Of a stretch of DNA of 64,000 nt, positions 23,350 to 35,579 are shown piece after piece. The stretch comes from Guillardia theta CCMP2712. Its lineage: Eukaryota > Protista > Cryptophyta. The stretch lies in the NCBI RefSeq assembly GCF_000315625.1, contig NW_005434668.1, positions 1,034,981 through 1,098,980 on the forward strand, in the 5' to 3' direction. Made by a program: the position numbers and the translations under genes. Under the pieces are notes generated by a model, which was not told where the DNA came from, searched no databases, and worked only from the letters and a program-made list of their open reading frames with translations. The first letter of the stretch is position 1. Every line of letters begins with the position of its first letter.

Positions 23350-25720
23350 ATGTCGTGCTACCTCGAGAACACGGTGAGACGCCGTCAATGCTGTTTGCTT
23401 CTCCCTCCTAGCTCGAACATGTTCCTTTCTCTCGCACTCCTCCCATCCTGATTCCAGGTTCCTGACTTTGATTGTTCAGGCTCTCTTCAAGAGCCAAATC
23501 GGCATCACTCCATGGGACACTTGCGTCAACGGTGTCAGTCAGTACAAGAACATCTTCGGCCTGTCCGACTACATGGGAAAGTCTTACGATGGGAGATGCT
23601 CTTTCTTCCAAGGAACTCCTCCCCTTCCAGAAGGTCTTGGATGGTTCATCATTCTCGGAATCGGCGTCATTTTCGCGTTGATCACTTCCCTCATGGTTTG
23701 GTTTGCGTCGTCCCACACTCGCGAAGATCAGCAGGTCGGCAGGAACTCTGAGCAGTTCACCTCTGGTGGACGACAGATCCCCGCGGGTCTCACAGCGGCG
23801 GATGTCGTGTCAAAGTGGACATGGGCAGCCACTCTCCTGCAGTCCAGCAATGTCGCATACCAGCAGGGCGTGTCTGGACCTTTCTGGTATGCTGCTGGAG
23901 CAACGATCCAGGTCATCCTGTTCGCGACTCTGGCCATCGAAATCAAGAGGAAGTGTCCTGCCATCCACACGGTGCTCGAGGTTGTGCTGGTCCGCTGGGG
24001 TGTCGCCGCGCACATGGTCTTCCTCTTCTTTTGCATTCTCACCAACCTCATCGTCACGGCCATGTTGATCTTGGGAGGAGCAGCGACAGTCGAGGCGCTG
24101 ACGGGTGTGAACGTCTATGCTGCAAGCTTCTTGATCCCTATTCCTGTTTGCGTCTACACCGCCTTTGGAGGGTTGAAGGGAACTTACTACGCCTCCTTCA
24201 CGCACACTGTCATCATCTTCATCGCTCTTCTCATCTTCATGTGGAAGATCTACGCGGGCCCCTCGGACATCGGAAGCAGCGACAGGATGTACGACAACTT
24301 GGTATGCGATGCCATCAAGAGTCAGAACACCACCGGCTTGGAGTTTGCCACTGGCAACAGCCATGGAAGTCTCTTGACCATGTGGTCGCAAGGAGGTCTT
24401 ATCTTCGGTATCGTCAACATCGTCGGAAACTTCGGCACGGTCTTCGTTGATCAGTCCTACTGGCAGGGAGCCATTGCCTGCCAGCCCAGCGCCACCTGGA
24501 AGGGTTACCTGCTGGGAGGCATCTCTTGGTTTGCCATCCCCTTCTCCATGGCGACTTCCCTCGGCCTCGCTGCCCATGCTCTCAACTTGCCCATCACTCC
24601 CTCCGAGTCCGCGCAGGGTCTGGTGCCCCCCGCCGTGGCTGTGCATCTGCTGGGTCAGGGCGGTGCCTTCTTGATCGCCTTCCAGCTGTTCCTTGCCGTG
24701 ACTTCGACTGCCAACTCCGAGCAGCTCGCCGTGTCCTCGCTCCTCGCCTACGACGTGTACAAGCGCTACATCAACCCCCAGGCCACCGGCAAGCAGATCA
24801 TCTTCGTCTCGCGCGCTGGAATCATCTTCTGGGCGATCTTCTCGGGTGTGGTTGCAGCCATTTTGAAGCAGTTCGACATCAGCTTGGGTTGGGTCTACAT
24901 GTCTATGGGTAACTTCATCGGCTCTGCTGTCGTTCCCATCACCTTCTCCCTCACCTGGAAGGACTGCACGGCTCTCGGAGCAATCTCTGGCGCCGTCGGC
25001 GGGCTCGCAGCAGCTTTCATCGGATGGTTCTCGGTTGCCGCTTCCCTGAACAATGGAGTGATCAATGTGGACACCCTTGGAGGAAACTACCCCATGCTGA
25101 CCGGCAACCTGCTTTCCCTCTGCGTCTCCCCCATCATCTGCATCATCGTCTCGCTAATGAGCCCTCAGAATTACGACTGGAAGGATCTCGAGGAGAAGAC
25201 CGGAACTTACCTTGTCGAGGACGACCCTCATGCGCACTTGAAGGCGTCGGGAGGTGTGGATTCCAAGGAAGCCATGGACAATGCCTACTACTGGGTGACG
25301 AGGGGAGGAACTGCGCTTTCCATCGTTCTTATCATCCTCTGGCCGCTGCTCACGCTGCCCCAGAACCCCTTCAGCAAGTCTTACTTTGGCTGGTGGGTGG
25401 CCATCGCCTTCATCTGGGGTCACATGGCCTTCTTGGCCACCGTCGTCTACCCTGTCGTCCAGTACTTCCTGCCCCCCAAGGACATGTACCTCGATCCCTC
25501 CGAGTCCGGAATTGCTCCCGTCAAGCCGCAGGAGATGCAGCAGAACTCTCCTGCTCCAGCTGGTTTCGTCATGAACCCCGCCATGGGGGCTCCGGGTATG
25601 ATGATGTATGCTCCTCCCTTCCAGTCGTGGAACGGTCCTGTCCAGGGCTTCAGCACTGTTGGACCCTTCGGTGCCACGAACGTCCAAGGCATGCCTACTC
25701 CCATATTCCCTCAAGCTTAA
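23350..25720 (+). CDS. DUR3: High-affinity urea:H+/Na+ symporter (SSS family)
   Basis: Exon 1 MSCYLENT (23350-23373), exon 2 23480-25720; motifs VVSKWTWAATLLQSS, GPFWYAAGATIQ, GNFGTVFVDQSYWQ, YDVYKRYINP. Confidence 0.97.
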
Positions 25721-25814
25721 AGTGTGATCATAAAACCAACAATAGAGTGAAGTGTGAATTTGTGAAAAATCTCAAAAAAAAGTAACTTTCTTTTTCTAAT
25801 AAACATGTTTCACA

Positions 25815-28800
25815 TCATTGTTGATAGCATTGGAGGAAGCTCGTCAGAATATTGGCGACAGCTGCCTCATTGCTTCCGATCTCCAACACCTGAGTTCGCA
25901 TTCAATCGATATCTCCTCATTTTCACATGTCAACCTTGCGCAAATACTTCTGCAAACCTTGCATCCTCTCTCGAACCACCTGATGTGCAACCTCTCACTC
26001 ACTTGCACATGATCACAATGAGGCATCTCACAACTTTCGACGAGGATGAACCCAGCCATCTGACAGCCGACAGTCAGGACCGGCTACTTGACATGGGACA
26101 ACTGTACCTCTTCGGGGGTATCTCTAGCGTTTCTTGTAACCTCCTGGAATGCAGCAGCTTCCCGAGTTCTCTCTTCATCTTCACAAAGTCCGAATACCTT
26201 GAGCATGGGTCACCTTCCAGACTGTCTTCCCCGTCCTCTCAAACCTCTTGTACACTGTCCATCGTTCGCCCTGCCAAGAAGATTTCACACATCCAACGCT
26301 TCGATGATAGCACGTGTCACCTTCATGCTTAGTTGAATCCCGTACATCACAAACCTGTTGGCAGTCTCAGAGCAGAAAAGGAGCCGCAACACTCACCCTT
26401 CATCCTGAACTTTGGCATGCCGAATCCGAATCTCCATGGACAGAAGATATTCTGCGAGAAGTGAAGGTGAAGGTAACTCAAAGCCGATCTCCTAGTACCT
26501 AGGTCGATCTCTTGGACGGGCCGGAGGACATTCAACGACAAAGTCCTGCGAGCGTTCCAGCCTACAAGGAGCTAGAGTGAGAGTTTGAAGTGGTCAAGTC
26601 GCATCGAGACCTTGTTGGATATCTTCTGGCAATTCCAAGCCCCTATGCTGCCGCACGGCCACTTCGATCTGTAGCAACAACCACTTGCAGAATGCCTCGT
26701 TTTGAATGTTGAGCATGAGAGAAGCCGTGGACGATTTTCGAGCGATCTTCTTGTTGAACGCGCAGCACATCCCGCGTCCCTGGTTCAGATACTCGAGGTC
26801 AATCTTGTTTTCTTCCAATCGTAACTGGGAGAGGTCGCCGAAGTTGATGGTGTACTTGATCGAGAGCGTCGGGAGGTTGTGACGATGAAGTTGGAATTTG
26901 TAGTTGCAGAAGATGAGCCGGCGGTCTGTGATGAACAGCACTATATATCCGAGCTTCGAGTCCTTCCATGCTGCATGCTGCACCAGCTTCTCGCCCCGGG
27001 ACCATCCCTCCTGCAAGCACAAGTGATTGTACATGGCCATGCCCATGGCCTCCCGCTGATTGTATCCCTTGAGGCTCGAGCCGGCGGGCCAATACCGCGG
27101 GTATCGTATCCTTGAGAGCATTTTACGGCGCGAGATGTAGGCTGGAGTGTTCTTGATGCCCTCAGTCGTGTACGCCACCATGTCTACCATGCCTGCCATC
27201 GGCTTAACTAGGATGCCCACCAGACCCTTCCCGACGCCTTTGATGGCTCCGCGCGTGCCGTCTCGAGAGAATCCCTTGATGGGCTGGTAGAAGATCCCAG
27301 TGAACCCTTGGAAGACGCCACGTCCTAACGACTTCCCTCCTCTCAGCACTCCTTGCCCCATGTGCATCGGGCGGTCGTGATCCATGAGGATTCTCGCTCG
27401 CTTGTAGTCGCCGTCGAAGGTGAGCTGCGCCAGGCCCTTCACCATCGCGTTCGATATGCCTGACGCTGACCCGAAGACTCCTTGTACCGTTCCTGCCGCC
27501 AGGCTGCCTGCGCCGAGAGCGAGGCCCCTTCCCATGGCGGTGATGTGACCTTCCTTCAAGCCCTCGCGAGAATGGCCGATGAAAGCAGACACTCCCTGAC
27601 TGATGTTGCTCACCAGACCTGTCGGGTTGCCCAGGAACTCAAAGGAGCCGATGAGGCGGTAGAAGCCGTTGGTGACGTCAGTCATGTAGTGCTTCACCAT
27701 CCGCGCGAAAAGTTCGTCTCGAGGGAGAAACGGCCGGTCCCACTCGACGCCAGACAGGAGGATCGGAGCTCCTTCCACGTTGCTCACGACGGCCTTGAGG
27801 GCCTCAACAAAGGCAAACACAGGAAGCTTCGAGACGGGGCCTAGACTCCTCAGCAACCCGTGCGCGTCCTCGGAGCCATGGAAGGTGAGAGTAATTTTCA
27901 TGGGGAAGATCCTTATTTGTTCCACGTAGATCCACCGGCAGTTCTCAGGGGAGGAGTCGATGGACGAAAGGTCGAAAGCGCCGAGCTTTCCGATGACTTG
28001 ACTGAAGGAAGAGTTGTCAACAACTTGCACGTCCTTGTAGCTCAAGTGGTTGATCAGCGACCGAAAGACTCCAAAGAGCTTCAAGATCAAACTTTCATCC
28101 GCCGAAATGCTGAAGTCAGACACCAAGACGTCGATCCTACCGCACCCGCAGTCAACAGAGGTCACTAGAGAGTGCGCAAGGTACCTGTCGAAGACATCCA
28201 GCGACTCGTTCCCGAGGTTTTGGACGATGGAGACTTGAAGGAAGAAGCTTTTACTCGCTGTCTTCACCATGTTGTTCGTCACGTTGTCTTGTCTTGCTCT
28301 CTGCTCGTGCCTGCGATCGGTTTCGTCCTTCATCTCACTTCCCTCGGAGCTCCAAGGGGTGTACGGCCCGAGGATCACAGGACTGCCCGAGTTCGTCTGG
28401 TTGTCAAGCTGGATGCAACGGTCAAACGGTTTCAGCCTCTCGAGTATGATCAACCTGCAGATGCTGCACGTGCAAGTCGATGATCCTGCAGTCCCCAGCC
28501 TCGACGTACTGCAGGAGGGAAGACGTTAGGCCGAGGGGAAGGAGCTATGGAGGGAGGGAAGGTACCTTGAGGTTGAGGTCGTGGAGAGATAGATAGATCA
28601 GCTCTGATGGGACTGAGTCGATGATGCTGACACCGATTCGAGAGAGACTGAGACTGATGTGAGTTGCGACGGTTCGCCTCGGCCTCTGCGTCCTGATGTC
28701 GCTCTTATCAGACCTCTGAGAGGACTGCTCGTCTTCGATCCTCAGGACCTGGCAAGAGCATTCAGATCGCTCCAAGAGGCCGTCAGATCACCTTCGTTGG

Positions 28801-31800
28801 CCCATCGGCGTGCACAGAGACATGAAGGTTGGTGACGTCATAGGGGTTGTGGTGGATGACGATGGGAGGAAACCTTCCAAGGCGATCTACGTTGCAGTCG
28901 AAGCGAGACAGCTCGAGGGAGTTGAGGCAGAATCGGAGGTGGAGGATCGGAGGCATGTGGGGATCGTCCCAGCTGTAGTCGTTGACGTCACCGGGGTTGA
29001 TCGTCTCTTCCCTGGCGTCTTTGACGTCTGCTTGCATCATTGCAATCGTGATGCTCCTCGTCTCGTTCTTGACTAGCAGTGCAGGCTTCTCGTTCCGATC
29101 CTTCACGACCAGGATGGTCGAGTTGCCCTGCATCAGCGCATGGGCGGTGACGTTCATGAAGGCTGCGGCTCCTTGCGCCGCCTCCGAGCACTTGGGAAGC
29201 TTCAACGAGGAGTACCCGAGCGACAGGAAAGAGATCCCGCTGCTCCAGCTACCCCCCTGCTCGCTACTTGTCGATCGATGCTCCTCGTTGCTCACCATCC
29301 GCAGGCGGAGCCTCCGGTCGGTGCTCTCGTCTGACCAGGTGATGACCTTCATCTGTCCGGGTTCCACCCGCTTCTTTTCCGCCTCATCCACTCCCACCTG
29401 AAGGAGCTCTAGATGCTCGTTGAGATGGTTGCAGAGGACGAAGCGCGGGAGGATCGTTACCAACTTCGTCTTATTTCCCAGCTCCTTGATCAGGGCCACG
29501 GAGACCACCAGGTCCACTGAGAACCCATCCCCTACCAGCGTGACCGGCGTCGAGCTCCCCACGGAGTCGATGGAGAAGGAGGGGCACCAGTCGCACGGCA
29601 CCATCATCCCCTCCCGCGCGTCGTAGCGTCGGAACGGAGGGCCAAGCCTGAGGGTTGCCTTGCTGCCTCCTACGTCCACCTTCCAGTGGAAGGAGAAGGG
29701 CGTCGGCACGATGTCTGTGCTCGTGAGGGCGTCTGGTAGCATGTGACTGGAGTCGCAGGAGTGGAGGGAGTGGTTGGCCGTCCTGACGCTGGGAGGGGAG
29801 GAGAAGGACGTCCTTGCTTCTACCTCGTGGCAGCCCTGCCCCCCCAGCAAGGAAACATTGCTTGCCGTCCACTTCTGCCCGTACTGGAGTGGGAAGGAGG
29901 TCCTGTTTACGAACCAGAAATGTGCGAAGATGTGCATGCGGAAGATCTGATTTGCCGTCTGCGAGTGCTCGAGGAAGATTCGGAGAATGTCTCGGCTGCT
30001 GTCGTACATGGTCACGTTTGTTTCGAGCTGAGAGCCATCTGGGCAGAAGACAGGCACGAACTCCGAGCCCTCCTCCAGCCCGCACACACAGAACCCAGCG
30101 CTGATCCTGCGGGAGAGGTCGAAGTCGTGAATGGCGTGCTCTTCCCCCGGGTAGATCTCGTAGCTCGGCTGAGGAGCCTTGTCGCCCTCAAGGAGGAAAC
30201 TCATGCGGACTTGGCAGGGGAGGAGGTTCTTGACCATGAGGACGGGGAGGAGTGAGATGCTCAGCCTCTCGCACACCTGCGACGAGGCGTCTGCCGTCCG
30301 TCTCGCCTGCTTGCTTGCTGTGTTGGGCGGGAGGGAGGCGACGTGCGCGACAACTCTGAGGTAGAAGGAGTTGAGATGGCTCGTGTCCTTGCGGCAGCAC
30401 ACGACCTTGTCCAGGTCGCGCTGGAGGGGGAGGAGGGTCGCTTCCAGGTTGGCCCCTGCGATCTCAAACGAGTCCTCCTCTTGTTCTTCGAGCACAGGCT
30501 GCACGCTGATGACGTAGTCGTCGATACCGTCAAGGAGGAAGAGTGGGGGCAAGTCGACGGTCTCTTTGGCTAGCAGGAGGTGCTGGAAGGCATTGATTCT
30601 GCCTCTGACGTTCATGGAAACTTTGATGGGAACGAAGCAATCGTTGGTAAGAGACATGTCGCTCTGGATCGTGACAACCCTCTTGGATATCTCATCATCA
30701 GCTTGCACGTTTGCCATCACTCTCGACCCATCGCTGAGCGTGTGGAATGACAGCCCTGCTTCTTCGATGTCGATGTTGAAACAGTTGTGATCGGCAGGAG
30801 CCGCGAGCCCTGGGAGGCTCTCAAGAGAGTCGTCGTACACGCTGATCTTCAACACACGATTTTCCTGATGGTTGTTGGCATTGGAGTAGGATGAGAAATG
30901 ATTGGGAGAAGTCGGATAGGCCGATTGCTGCTTCCACGTCTTGTCGGGAAAGTGGATCGGCTCTGAATGCATTGGCATGACAGTCTGCACGTGAGGGTTT
31001 TCTGTAGCGTCACTTTGAGAAGTCTGGATGCATAACTCCACTCCGCATCGATTCTTGATGGCATACGCCGAGAAAGGATTCACAAGGCAGCGATGACTTG
31101 AAACATCTTCCTCCTGTTTGACAGCTCCCTCTGTTTCCGAATCTGCAGCTGCGAACTTTGACGCGGGGAAGTGATGCTTCCATGTCAGCAGAGTGCTTAG
31201 CAAGGTGGCGAGATGGTTCTCAGCGATGTTGATGTTCATCTCGTCGCTAGATGACAGGCTGTAAGTGACTACTTCCGAGACTTGCGAGCCATCGACCTCC
31301 TGCTGCGCGTCCTCGGGGATGACCTTGGGATGGGGAGGAACAAGGTCAGAGACGAGTAGCGAGGACAGGAGGGAGAAAAACCTTCTGGCTCTTCTCCATC
31401 ATCATCTCCCAGCTCTCGATGAGGGGCTCGAACTCAAAGACGGTGCTGTTGAAGAGCGAGGCCTTTATCCTTAGCTGTAGCATACCCCATGTTTCCCCGT
31501 CGAACGCGTTGACCTGTTTGCATCCCATCACTTGCACACTCGTTTGTTTGAGAATGCCTTACGTTCATCCCTTGGATCTCAGCGAGGGAGAGAGAGAGGA
31601 AAGGTTCGTTGAAGCCCGCGCAGTCGTTGATGATGACGATGTTCAGAGAGTCGAAGTCAACTCGAAACTGCTTCTGCGTCTGAAGAGCTTGATCTTCCTC
31701 TCTGTCCTGTTCATTGATCCTAACCTCCTCCAACTCCCCCGAGCCATGTCTGCTTCGCTCCTTTCCATCCTCTCCTTTGCCACTCCCCCCCCCCTCTGCT

Positions 31801-34800
31801 GCAGAAGGAGAAGAGAATGGCCGCAGAACCCTCTCCTGAAGGTCCATATAGAGAAGAACGTCCTGGTACGAGATCAAGAGGTCGAAGCAACTTCCTACCA
31901 TCCACATCTTCGAGCTCTTCTCTCCTTCGAAGATGTACTCAAGGGACAGGCTGGTCGGATGCAGCGCGTGCCTCCTCTCCTCGTGCTCCCCCCCTTGCTC
32001 CAGAAAAGTCTGGACGTCCTGCAAGTGGAGGAAACCTTTCCGGTAACCTGCTGGTTTGCTCATGTCCTTGATCAGCCCCGAGACCTGAGCGGGTGTGAGC
32101 CAGGTGAAAGAAGGGTGAGAGATCAGAAACAGAGGGCGAGAGACGGTAGATGGGAGGTTGAAGATGCGAGTGGTTTACCGTGACGACGACTTTTCTTCCA
32201 GACGGTTTTGCGACATCTTCGAAGAAGACCACCTTTTGCTCCTCAAGGAAAACATGGTATTCAGTGATGTGATCATCCTGAACTGCCGCGTTCCTCTGCT
32301 CTGATTTCCGCCTCATCTCACCCTGCCCTATGCTAGACGACGTGATGCTCCTGTCGTCAGCTGACTTAGTCTCAGCCTCAGCAGCCGTGTTGCTCGAAGT
32401 TCGGAACACAGATATGATGGAGCTGAGGACCTCAGGAAGAAAATTCAATCTCATCCTCCCGACCTGTATGACATGTCTCGAGTGATTCAGCTCAAAGGAC
32501 GACGAGTAACTCAAGGCAAATTGGCTCTCCGCCTCCGAGCACATCACTTCCTCGATCTCTTCCTTGATCTTCACGTGCAGCCTCTTGAGTTGGAAGTCGA
32601 AGGACGAGAAACCTTCCGAGAACTGGACGAAGGATAGGTTGACTTCACTGAGATGACACAGAGCGATGAATGCTTTCTGCCCGGATCCGATGTCCTCCTC
32701 CTCGACCAGCCTGAGAGCAATCGGATGCTCATCGGCCATCCGGACCTTGACATCCAGATGCCTCCATTCTTCCTGCACGAAGGTGATTCTGTCAGTTGTG
32801 AATTCCACCTCGTCGAAGTCCTGTGTTGTTGTGTTCATCTCTTGAATGCCTGCAAACAGCCCAGGTCACAAAACTTCACATGAACCTCTCATGTTGAGAT
32901 CAACATGAAAGTCCAGCCACCTGATATCTCAGTCGTTCCGAGCTCCTCAACTTCCTGAGAGCCGAAGACGTGATTCCAAATCTCAAAGATCGCCGAATAC
33001 TTGTGCTGCGACATAAGGCACTCGAAGGTTGGTAGAGCTACTTTGATCTTGGTTCTCGTCAGCATCTCATTTGATGGCGCAATGCTGTTGTCAATGCAGA
33101 CACTGATCCTGACGTTGTTGATAAGGCTGAGATTGCTGTAAGAAGCAGCATCTTTTGCTGCATCCCAGCACTGATGCCTCTTACAGATCATCATGTACAC
33201 CTCGGACAGCTCAAGAAGGATACTGTTGTACAGCCTCTCATCCACTTCATCCTCCTCCTCCATCTTCTGCAGGAGTGGAGACAGCTTTGAAATGTTCGAG
33301 GACTTGAGTGACCAGATGGCGAGGTTTCCGGGCTGGACGACCAGGGAAGGGCAGTCATCCCTGCCATGTTCGACATTCTGAGGGATGATGATGACAGGGC
33401 TTCTCAAGTCAAAGGACAGGTCGGCAACAATCTTAGCCTGCAGCGCTGACTTGACGTTCTTCTCCGACACTTCTTTGGCGTGCTGGAGTTGCTCCGCTGC
33501 CGTTCGCTTCAGCGCCTCCAGTGCGGGAGATTCCCCGATGTCAAGGAAGTCAAGGAGATGGCGGAGGAAGGGCGGGTTGTAGACGATGGTCATGCGATCA
33601 AGCATAGCTATCATCCTCGAGTCGCAAGCCTCCCCGTCCGACGGGTTCGACTCGTACTTGAGGACCAGCAGCGGAGGCTCCTCGTCCTTGCTGGGAGAAG
33701 CCTTGCCGACGCTGGAACTCTTTCCGCTCAGTGACTTGGCTACGTCCCACACGGAGCTGGTGATGGAGGCAGGAAAGAGGATCCTGGAGGCAAACCTCTG
33801 CCTGCTCGGCGAGAGTTTCGACCTGCTGGAGAACCGCGATACCACACAGTCAAACCCTGAGGCGATGTTGGGGCTGCAAAGGTCGAAGCAGGAGAGGTTT
33901 CCAATCTGCAGGCTGCAAGCAAACGAAGTTTCTTTCTGTACGAGATTGATCGCCAAGTCCCGCAGCTTGAACTTCGCGATCTGCCCGCGGTCATCGTCGA
34001 AAGGTGACTTGGGGTTGGAGACGGTGACCGACCCAAAGCGCAAGATGAACTCGAGACGCATCCTCGAGATCCTAGACTCGTTCCCAGCCTCTCCGTTGAT
34101 AGTCGATGCATTCTCGCTACTACCCTCGTCGGAGATCCCAAACTCGTTCATAATCTCGGCAGTGGCGCTGAAAGTCAGAGGGTACTCCCCCTGCTTCACC
34201 TCGCCTTCCCCTGCATCTTCTCGGCGCAGGAAGCCCGGCATCCAACCAGACACCCTCGTGTAAAGACTTGCTGGTTGCCTGCTGGAGTCTTTGACAAGGG
34301 TCTGCTGGTCTGCCTCCTGAATGGCCCGAAGTTTGGCGATGACGGCCTTGCGAGCTGTGAGAAGGGCGTCCAAGGGAAGAACATCCTCTAGTTCCTCCAG
34401 TTCTTTCACCTCCTCCTCTTGGATGGCTGGTCCTGAAAGGTTCTGCAGAAGCCTTCTGCGGTACAGAAACGCGTATCGTGGCCACTTGACTATCAGGCGG
34501 AAAACTTTGTTCTTATCAAACCTCAGCATTCTCTGGTTCCTCTCCCACGCGATGCAGTTGAAGGCAAACAACCACCATTCCTTCGGACTCTCTTTCACAC
34601 TGACATGCGGCCTGAACTGATTGTAGCGAGCAATCCTCTCAAAGTTACGGAAGTACTCGAGAGTGTAGATGACGTCTCGATATTGCTGCTTCTGCATACT
34701 CAGCTCCAACCTGTTGATCTCCCACATCGCGTCGTACTTTGGATGCGCTTCATCTGGCTCATCACTCTTGTTCAACCTCATGCGAAAGATGGAATCGACA

Positions 34801-35579
34801 GGTTTGATGATGAAGTTCAGAAGTTTCGTATCGAAAGAAACATCGTCAGCTAGTTCGTCAATGTCGTCCACCACGCTAGAAAATCCCTCGAGAAACTCCT
34901 GTAGATCCATCCCATCATTCCAAAACATCTTCTCGTCCGAGTTGAGGTAGATACTGAACCCTTTCAAGTTGCACAGCTTGTTTAAGAAGGTTTGGTTCTC
35001 AACAAACGCCGGCTTCCAAGTCGAATTCGTCGACTCAATGGAAAGATGGTTCAGAAGCACGCCCGCGCAGAACGGGTGAGAGGCATGCACAGTTGAGTCC
35101 TCGTACCGGACATGAATTTGCGATATGTGAATCTGAACATTGTCCACAATCTTGGTGATAAGCTTGGAGTAGAAGGATTCGCTGACCTTCTCATCAAACT
35201 GCGCAAACCCGTATTTCAAGGATATGTCGAACTCAGCCAATGCATCTTTCTTCGCCAACGTCTCTCTCCTCTTCTTCTCCTCGGCTGAAATCTTGGGATT
35301 TGTGTTCGGCGACAGGATCATGTTCAAACCCTTGATCTTTACTATCACGGGCTTGCTCCGCAGGTTCTTCCATGGTATATCCAACCTCAATTCCTCTAGC
35401 TTACCAGCTACAAGAGTGACAGGAAGATCAAAGTCGTCCAGAGCTGTTTGCTTCAGAGAAAGATCCTTGAGCAGAATCTCTCCTCTCCACACAGACAACT
35501 CTGTCGCCTTCTTGTCTATCCCGTCAACATACTTGCCCGCCAGTCGCTCTATTACGCTAGCAAGAATGCCCTCGAGCAT
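25815..35579 (-). CDS. VPS13: VPS13-family bulk lipid transfer protein (Chorein-N, VAB/SHR-BD, ATG2_C, PH-like) with a spliced C-terminal PX domain
   Basis: MLEGILASVIERLAGKYVDGID..KIVDNVQIHISQIHVRYED; TKLVTILPRFVLCNHL; VSVHADGPTKV; GSFEFLGNPTGLV..GVGKGLVGILVKPMAGMVD; RIRYPR; an in-frame 49-nt intron at 26562-26610 leads to the PX exons. Confidence 0.95.

What the first reader, a model, noticed from the sequence alone, without database searches (positions are those of the whole stretch)
25815..26610. VPS13 carries a fused C-terminal PX domain hidden in small exons
Seen: the ORF-track stop (..IQQGLDAT*) lies inside a canonical 49-nt GT-AG intron (26610-26562). Splicing seven short exons in frame gives ..EYLLSMEIRIRHAKVQDEGFVMYGIQLSMKGERWTVYKRYSDFVKMKRELGKLLHSRRLQETLEIPPKRWLGSSSSKVVRERMQGLQKYLRKVLEIG..LTSFLQCYQQ*. 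This has the PX hallmarks: W.V.KRYSDF, a PPK loop and ER..GL..YL. Established: VPS13 normally ends in ATG2_C-PH, and yeast Vps13 is recruited to endosomes by the separate PX adaptor Ypt35. Inference: this is a Rosetta-stone fusion giving a lipid bridge that targets itself to PI3P membranes. Retention of that intron would give a PX-less isoform, a possible localisation switch.
Basis: partly seen in the sequence, partly recalled or inferred. Interest (0 to 1): 0.8.

Follow-up and report, generated by a model that had tools for sequence, protein, structure and literature searches.

The report
VPS13 lipid-bridge gene with PX tail
A roughly 3,000-residue VPS13 lipid-transfer protein really does end in a spliced-on PX (PI3P-binding type) domain built from eight tiny exons, but oomycete VPS13 proteins in public databases already show the same layout, so this is a neat variant and not a new kind of system.

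Summary
On the minus strand, a VPS13 gene runs from the ATG at 35579 to the stop at 25815. Its last large exon ends at 26611. Eight GT-AG introns of 42-52 nt then join eight short exons of 26-90 nt.

- **The tail is a PX domain.** The 137-residue tail scores E 9.8e-14 against Pfam PX (PF00787). It has the Arg-Tyr / PPK-Lys / helix-Arg tetrad required for canonical PI3P binding.
- **The splicing is real.** Two transcript contigs from different studies (11.4 and 9.1 kb, 100% identical to the window) carry all eight junctions. They run on into the VPS13 body. A DNA run is unspliced.
- **Relatives agree.** Environmental relatives (Tara Oceans metagenome scaffolds) encode the VPS13 C-terminal region, the PH-like domain and PX as one uninterrupted ORF.

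So the fusion is real and the PX is not a separate gene.

The layout is not unique. About 20 named oomycete species have 4,300-5,600-residue VPS13 proteins ending in PX. I found no paper that describes this. Whether the two groups share one origin is unresolved (p-AU 0.59).

Self-targeting to PI3P membranes is a reasonable inference but was not tested. The proposed intron-retention switch has no support.

This scan has noted other VPS13 genes elsewhere in the same genome. None of those notes mentions a PX tail.

The parts
25815..35579 (-). Coding span of the VPS13-PX gene, from ATG 35579 to TGA 25817-25815. About 3,000 residues after splicing; the length is inferred.
   Evidence: Pfam domain order along the minus-strand ORFs. 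The twelve introns between 25890 and 28789 are seen in transcript contigs. Three more introns upstream are inferred from frame changes only. The 9,074-nt X3 contig starts at 25786 and is long enough to reach about 35600.
32892..35579 (-). N-terminal exon: VPS13_N (chorein plus the first groove repeats).
   Evidence: PF12624, E 1.4e-134, profile positions 1-866 of 1317, beginning at residue 1 of the ORF.
28786..31239 (-). VAB (VPS13 adaptor-binding) domain.
   Evidence: PF25036, E 5.7e-41, profile positions 11-567 of 570.
26611..28136 (-). Last large exon: the conserved ATG_C-like region, then the PH-like VPS13_C domain (about 26780-27109).
   Evidence: PF25037, E 3.6e-07, at residues 449-558 of the ORF. 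4,617 VPS13-type hits with E <= 0.001. The exon's upper boundary comes from the 28137-28184 joint.
26562..26610 (-). Intron 1 (49 nt, GT..AG). It contains the in-frame TGA (26596-26594) that ends the naive ORF.
   Evidence: Sequence. Spliced out in the X1 and X3 contigs and present in DNA run X15.
26499..26561 (-). Exon B (63 nt): linker between the PH-like domain and PX.
   Evidence: Joints on both sides in X1 and X3.
25818..26451 (-). PX domain. It is coded by exons 26451-26397, 26354-26321, 26270-26245, 26197-26108, 26059-26032, 25979-25935 and 25889-25818, separated by six introns of 42-52 nt.
   Evidence: PF00787, E 9.8e-14, tail residues 50-133, profile positions 5-82 of 84. PDB matches to the CISK/SGK3, Nischarin, KIF16B and SNX16 PX domains. 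All joints seen in X1 and X3.
25786..25814 (-). Short 3' UTR. The transcript contig ends at 25786, so it overlaps the 3' end of the convergent plus-strand symporter gene.
   Evidence: X3 record 6 begins at 25786. X22 shows plus-strand poly(A) ends at 25751 and 25817.

Best explanation
This is the 3' end of one gene for a VPS13-family bridge-like lipid transfer protein. The domain order is VPS13_N/chorein, groove repeats, VAB, an ATG_C-like region, then a PH-like VPS13_C domain. About 30 residues after the PH-like domain, the protein continues into a canonical PX domain. Eight micro-exons encode the linker (one exon) and the PX domain (seven). These steps are shown: the exons are spliced onto the VPS13 body in mRNA, the tail is a PX domain, and its closest solved relatives are PI3P-binding PX domains. 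This step is inferred: the PX domain holds the C-terminal end of the lipid bridge on PI3P-rich membranes (endosome, vacuole or autophagic membranes), while the N-terminal end sits on the donor organelle. That would build into the protein what yeast achieves in trans, where the PX adaptor Ypt35 binds the VAB domain. The VAB domain is retained here, so adaptor-based recruitment can still operate alongside.
For: VPS13 domains lie in the canonical order on the minus strand. Eight in-frame GT-AG introns give a 137-residue tail. Transcript contigs from two studies match the window with 0 differing letters: X1 is 11,401 nt and X3 is 9,074 nt. Both carry all eight joints plus four upstream joints in one continuous record, and DNA run X15 is unspliced. 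The tail scores 52.1 bits against Pfam PX, E 9.8e-14. Its best PDB matches are designed CISK-PX (3.9e-14), Nischarin, KIF16B, SNX16, SNX24 and SGK3. In those alignments the tail residues R59-Y60 (KRYSDF), K88 (IPPKR) and R103 (RERMQGLQKYL) occupy the four positions that Chandra 2019 (PMC6449406) reports as strictly required for canonical PtdIns3P binding. The same paper tested SNX16 as PtdIns3P-exclusive and SGK3 as binding PtdIns3P. Relatives P0002 and P0037 encode the VPS13 C-terminus, the PH-like domain and PX in one uninterrupted ORF, P0002 on Tara Oceans metagenome (DNA) scaffolds, P0037 on JGI/ENA records. Both are collinear with the spliced model and share WTVYKRYSDF. The tetrad is also kept in the oomycete VPS13-PX proteins, with Y->F and K->R. 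Bean 2018 (PMC6168272) shows that a PI3P-binding PX protein recruits yeast Vps13.
Against: No lipid binding or localisation was tested. Runs X1 and X3 are labelled RNA only by guess; their intron-less contigs are what identifies them as cDNA. Some PX domains with an intact canonical site also bind other phosphoinositides (SGK3 is group IV in PMC6449406), so specificity could be broader than PI3P. The upstream part of the gene model (29000-35579) rests on ORFs and inferred introns, not on laid transcripts.
Confidence: 0.8

Rival explanations
1. The PX exons belong to a separate downstream gene, and the joined model is an artefact of reading or of contig assembly.
For: Logan contigs can merge neighbouring transcripts. 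X1's contig does run on into the convergent symporter gene.
Against: The link between the VPS13 exon and the next exon is itself a splice joint (26611|26561) with GT..AG ends. It is present in two runs from different studies and absent from the DNA run. Relatives have the same order in a single ORF with no splicing needed. At least 20 oomycete proteins have the same architecture.
Confidence: 0.02
2. The fusion is real, but the PX domain does not serve PI3P targeting. It might bind other phosphoinositides through a secondary site, bind a protein partner, or fold back on the PH/ATG_C end as a regulator.
For: In Chandra 2019, fewer than a third of the human PX domains tested (12 of 39) bind only PtdIns3P, and some bind no membrane (PMC6449406). 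The best natural matches include SGK3, which also binds PtdIns(3,4)P2.
Against: All four canonical PtdIns3P residues are present and are conserved in both PX-bearing VPS13 groups. In that study, every PX domain lacking PI3P binding lacked at least one of them.
Confidence: 0.13
3. Regulated retention of intron 1 (26562-26610) yields a PX-less VPS13 that ends ..IQQGLDAT. This would act as a localisation switch.
For: The intron holds an in-frame TGA five codons in, so a retained form would end just after the PH-like domain, like a canonical VPS13.
Against: Only the spliced form is seen in X1 and X3. The raw-read run X22 gave essentially no depth on this gene, so retention could not be measured. 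Any of the gene's short introns would truncate the protein if retained, so this one is not special. Relatives P0002 and P0037 have no intron here, so such a switch is not a conserved feature.
Confidence: 0.05

Closest known systems
Canonical VPS13 (yeast Vps13, human VPS13A/C; Levine 2022, PMC7613979)
   Same: N-terminal chorein/VPS13_N, VAB and the PH-like VPS13_C domain lie in the same order. The C-terminal region finds thousands of VPS13 relatives.
   Different: The canonical proteins end with the PH domain. This one continues into a PX domain. Pfam ATG_C itself was not detected at E <= 0.01.
Yeast Vps13 with its PX adaptor Ypt35 (Bean 2018, PMC6168272)
   Same: Both couple a VPS13 lipid bridge to a PI3P-type PX domain.
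   Different: In yeast the PX sits on a separate protein, which binds the VAB domain through a PxP motif and competes with other adaptors. Here the PX is covalently attached at the C-terminus. No homology between this PX and Ypt35 was tested.
Oomycete VPS13-PX proteins, e.g. Saprolegnia diclina XP_008618861.1, Phytophthora ramorum H3HB06, and Achlya, Pythium, Bremia, Plasmopara, Peronospora
   Same: The architecture is the same: VPS13_N, VPS13_M, VAB, VPS13_C, then a C-terminal PX about 110-120 residues after VPS13_C. The PI3P tetrad positions are kept. The PDB best-hit lists are similar.
   Different: They are much longer (4,300-5,600 residues) and have C2 and PDZ hits. Their PX is only weakly similar to the window's (13.9 bits) and has Phe for Tyr and Arg for Lys. 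In free tree searches they form a separate clade.
Plant VPS13M1/M2 with extra PH and C2 domains (Levine 2022; Leterme 2023, PMC10683392)
   Same: Same principle: a VPS13 decorated with additional lipid-binding accessory domains.
   Different: The domain types and insertion sites differ. Neither survey lists a PX domain.

Membership tests
VPS13 (bridge-like lipid transfer protein) | N-terminal chorein/VPS13_N region | tested here: met
   PF12624, E 1.4e-134, starting at residue 1 of the ORF that begins at 35579.
VPS13 (bridge-like lipid transfer protein) | VAB adaptor-binding repeat domain | tested here: met
   PF25036, E 5.7e-41, profile positions 11-567 of 570. The invariant Asn residues of the repeats were not checked.
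VPS13 (bridge-like lipid transfer protein) | C-terminal ATG_C region and PH-like domain | tested here: inconclusive
   VPS13_C (PF25037) is met at E 3.6e-07. ATG_C gave no Pfam hit at E <= 0.01, although residues 60-410 of the exon align with VPS13 relatives at up to 1e-53.
VPS13 (bridge-like lipid transfer protein) | Continuous repeating-beta-groove fold | not tested
   No structure was predicted.
PX domain (PF00787) | Profile match above the curated threshold over most of the domain | tested here: met
   52.1 bits against a cut-off of 21.6, E 9.8e-14, profile positions 5-82 of 84. Eighteen PDB PX chains match at E <= 0.01.
PX domain (PF00787) | Canonical PtdIns3P tetrad: the Arg-Tyr pair at beta3/alpha1, Lys of the PPK loop, and Arg in alpha2 (PMC6449406) | tested here: met
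   Tail residues R59-Y60, K88 and R103 align with the corresponding residues of CISK-PX, Nischarin and KIF16B. They are conserved in relatives.
PX domain (PF00787) | Three-stranded sheet plus helical subdomain fold | not tested
PX domain (PF00787) | Binding of PI3P-containing membranes | not testable with these tools
   Needs liposome, ITC or localisation assays.
Single-gene fusion (Rosetta-stone type) | Both parts on one mRNA and in one reading frame | tested here: met
   The joint 26611|26561 and seven further joints lie in one contig in each of two runs. The frame is continuous. Relatives have a single ORF.

The most novel reading that the evidence does not exclude
PX-bearing VPS13 is one old paralogue family of 'self-targeting' lipid bridges. 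On this reading it is shared by this lineage, its environmental relatives and the oomycetes (by descent or by transfer) and has been overlooked in VPS13 surveys. It would be a natural, repeatedly retained cis version of the Ypt35-Vps13 adaptor pairing.
Probability: 0.3. Interest if true: 0.55.

Novelty: new variant of a known kind. Interest (0 to 1): 0.45.

Why it matters
VPS13 proteins are placed at particular organelle contacts by exchangeable adaptors and by accessory domains. A VPS13 with a built-in PI3P-type PX domain is natural evidence from gene fusion that coupling VPS13 to PI3P membranes is a recurring functional need. It also offers a simple experimental handle, because one point mutation in the PX pocket should move the bridge. 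The same layout occurs in at least two distant groups, here and in oomycetes. It is absent from the two published inventories of VPS13 accessory domains that I could read, so those inventories are incomplete for protists. The case also shows that ORF-based gene calls in this genome cut off real C-terminal domains that are coded in 26-90-nt exons.

Tried and rejected
- **Raw RNA reads (X22).** This looks like a 3'-tag library. It covers only the convergent symporter gene and gives near-zero depth on VPS13.
- **Separate-gene reading.** Rejected on the splice joints.
- **Literature.** No paper in the held library has VPS13 + 'PX domain' + oomycete or Phytophthora. Levine 2022 and Leterme 2023 contain no 'PX domain' or 'phox'. 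Searches were malformed queries.
- **One fusion event or two.**
  - The FastTree and IQ-TREE quick trees give two PX clades on an unresolved backbone.
  - The AU test does not reject a single clade: p 0.587, and the constrained tree is 4.5 lnL units better.
  - Both groups sit on long stems, so this stays open.
  - The PDB best-hit lists of the two PX types are similar, but the top hit is a designed consensus-like PX, so this is not decisive.
- **Naming the window's clade.** The closest relatives are all unnamed environmental proteins.
- **Upstream ORF of L001.** No Pfam hit, but tblastn shows it is the end of the VAB domain.
- **Structure prediction.** Not run.

Full report
**Observation**

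The long ORF ends ..PEDIQQGLDAT*, and its TGA is at 26596-26594. The stop lies inside a 49-nt stretch, 26610-26562, that begins GT and ends AG. Removing this intron and seven more keeps one frame down to the TGA at 25817-25815.

The seven further introns are 26498-26452, 26396-26355, 26320-26271, 26244-26198, 26107-26060, 26031-25980 and 25934-25890. All eight are GT..AG and 42-52 nt long. The eight exons after the large one measure 63, 55, 34, 26, 90, 28, 45 and 75 nt.

**The gene it belongs to**

Pfam on the minus-strand ORFs gives the canonical VPS13 order:

| Domain | Pfam | E-value | Location |
|---|---|---|---|
| VPS13_N | PF12624 | 1.4e-134 | ORF 32892-35579, from residue 1 (ATG at 35579) |
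| VAB | PF25036 | 5.7e-41 | ORF 28786-31239 |
| VPS13_C (PH-like end) | PF25037 | 3.6e-07 | last large exon, about 26780-27109 |

Pfam ATG_C itself was not detected. The stretch before VPS13_C is nevertheless the best-conserved part in 4,617 VPS13-type hits of an exhaustive profile-free search. The upstream introns between 29000 and 35579 are inferred from frame changes only.

**Is the tail spliced onto VPS13 in RNA?**

Yes. I laid four public runs on 25400-29000, chosen from the run search.

- Runs X1 and X3 come from different studies. Each holds one long contig that matches the window with no differing letters: 11,401 nt in X1 and 9,074 nt in X3.
- Both contigs skip exactly the eight predicted introns. 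The ends read CT..AC on the plus strand, which is GT..AG on the minus strand.
- They also skip four introns further up: 28137-28184, 28409-28454, 28509-28565 and 28747-28789.
- The first joint, 26611|26561, is itself a splice joint. It therefore links the VPS13 exon to the tail at the transcript level and cannot be an assembly merge.
- The contigs of DNA run X15 are collinear with the window, so the joined form does not exist as DNA there.
- The X3 contig starts at 25786, 29 nt past the stop. From its length it should reach about 35600, just upstream of the ATG. That last point is an inference, because I could not lay more sequence.
- The only raw-read RNA run, X22, behaves like a 3'-tag library. 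It covers only the neighbouring plus-strand gene.

**Is the tail a PX domain?**

Yes. Pfam PX (PF00787) scores 52.1 bits against a gathering score of 21.6. The E-value is 9.8e-14, over tail residues 50-133 and profile positions 5-82 of 84.

Against all PDB chains, the best matches are all PX domains: designed CISK-PX (3.9e-14), Nischarin (2.3e-09), KIF16B (1.8e-08), SNX16, SNX24, SGK3, SNX14 and Vam7.

Chandra et al. 2019 (PMC6449406) state that canonical PtdIns3P binding strictly requires four side chains:

- a sequential Arg-Tyr pair at the beta3/alpha1 junction;
- the Lys of the PPK loop;
- an Arg in helix alpha2.

In the HMMER alignments these positions are R59-Y60 (VYKRYSDF), K88 (EIPPKRW) and R103 (RERMQGLQKYL) of the tail. 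All four are present. Of the best matches, that paper tested SNX16 as binding only PtdIns3P and SGK3 as binding it along with other lipids.

**Relatives**

Among the 150 best representatives, a local phmmer search with the tail followed by Pfam found a C-terminal PX after the VPS13 C-terminal region in four.

- **P0002** is 753 residues long and 59% identical in the core. It lies on Tara Oceans metagenome scaffolds as one uninterrupted ORF. tblastn shows the order end of VAB, C-terminal region, then PX, all on one strand.
- **P0037** is 460 residues long and comes from JGI/ENA metagenomes.
- **P0146** is 2,171 residues long: Saprolegnia diclina XP_008618861.1.
- **P0100** is 3,781 residues long, on a 38.8-kb metagenome scaffold, with VPS13_N, M, VAB, C and PX in one ORF.

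BLASTP of my spliced model against P0002 and P0037 is collinear through the PH-like domain into PX. WTVYKRYSDF is identical in all three, and the PPK-loop and alpha2 motifs are conserved. A word search with P0002 found only unnamed environmental relatives, four clusters of which carry PF00787. This comparative evidence does not depend on any splicing model.

**Not unique: oomycetes**

Searches with the C-terminal regions of P0146 and P0100 returned VPS13 proteins from about 20 named oomycete species. These include many Phytophthora species and also Nothophytophthora, Peronospora, Plasmopara, Bremia, Pythium, Lagenidium, Achlya, Saprolegnia and Aphanomyces.

Full-length models are 4,270-5,582 residues long; some listed models are shorter fragments. 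Precomputed Pfam for the full-length ones is PF12624, PF25033, PF25036, PF25037 and PF00787. Some carry UniRef names such as 'PX domain-containing protein'. In my alignment their PX keeps the tetrad positions, with Phe for Tyr and Arg for Lys.

The architecture is therefore already visible in public databases. I found no paper that describes it.

- Levine 2022 (PMC7613979) and Leterme 2023 (PMC10683392) survey VPS13 accessory domains without mentioning PX.
- No paper in the library combines VPS13, 'PX domain' and oomycete or Phytophthora.
- The library lacks most subscription journals, so this absence is weak evidence.

**One origin or two?**

This stays open.

- Trees of the C-terminal region (FastTree with 146 rows; IQ-TREE quick with 71 rows) put the PX-bearers in two well-supported clades. 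One holds the window plus P0002. The other holds P0100 plus the oomycetes. The backbone between them is unresolved.
- The AU test does not reject a tree in which they form one clade (p-AU 0.587). That constrained tree had a log-likelihood 4.5 units higher than the free quick search.
- Both clades have long stems, so attraction between long branches is possible.
- The two PX types are only weakly similar to each other (13.9 bits). Their PDB best-hit lists are similar, but the top hit is a designed, consensus-like domain.

**Mechanism**

Shown: one mRNA and one reading frame; a PX domain about 30 residues after the PH-like domain; an intact canonical PI3P pocket by alignment; and a retained VAB domain.

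Inferred from established knowledge: VPS13 bridges two organelles, and its C-terminal modules (VAB, ATG_C, PH) select the partner membrane (PMC7613979). In yeast, the PI3P-binding PX protein Ypt35 recruits Vps13 to endosomes and the vacuole through a PxP motif that binds VAB (PMC6168272). A cis PX should therefore bias the C-terminal end of this bridge towards PI3P membranes. I put about 0.8 on the whole statement. The fusion itself is close to certain, and the PI3P targeting is about 0.7-0.75.

**The isoform idea**

Retaining intron 1 would indeed end the protein five codons later. I see no evidence that this happens. Only spliced contigs appear in X1 and X3, though contigs drop rare variants. 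X22 gave no usable raw-read depth. The closest relatives have no intron at that position.

**Other points**

- Notes of this scan mention other VPS13 genes on other pieces of the same genome. If correct, this is one of several paralogues. I did not check them.

**Verdict**

It is a VPS13 paralogue with a C-terminal PI3P-type PX domain encoded by micro-exons. It is a new variant of a known kind: it goes unmentioned in the two VPS13 accessory-domain surveys I read, but it is paralleled by a conserved, database-visible oomycete architecture. Interest is moderate.

Noticed in passing
window 28137-28184 (-): A 48-nt in-frame GT-AG intron is hidden inside the long ORF 26594-28453. Both transcript contigs splice it out, so a plain ORF translation carries 16 residues that are not in the protein.
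   Followed up: partly
window 23468-25817 (+): The convergent neighbour is a sodium:solute symporter family gene (PF00474, E 2.3e-17). Its poly(A) ends at 25751 and 25817 overlap the VPS13-PX 3' end (stop 25815, contig end 25786) by about 30 nt. This explains why the X1 contig runs from one gene into the other.
   Followed up: partly
window 25815-26561 (-): Intron density is very high in the tail: eight introns in 416 nt of coding sequence, with exons as short as 26 and 28 nt. The preceding exon is 1,526 nt. The relative on scaffold L001 has the same stretch without any intron.
   Followed up: no
window 25631 (+): A>G in 26 of 146 RNA reads of run X22, within the neighbouring symporter gene's 3' region. 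It could be an allele, a strain difference or editing.
   Followed up: no
P0146, P0174-P0191 (oomycete proteins); P0194, P0204-P0209, P0223-P0224: Other VPS13 accessory domains turned up. Saprolegnia P0146 has C2 and weak PDZ hits next to PX, and several of the other oomycete proteins are named PDZ domain-containing by UniRef. GRAM (PF02893) appears in P0194, PH (PF00169) in P0223 and P0224, and PDZ_2 (PF13180) in a second set of VPS13 proteins (P0204-P0209), the one named member being from the oomycete Globisporangium.
   Followed up: no
window 28842: The contig of DNA run X15 has an extra G after 28842 relative to the window, at depth about 5. The transcript contigs agree with the window, so this is probably an assembly error in that run.
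   Followed up: no
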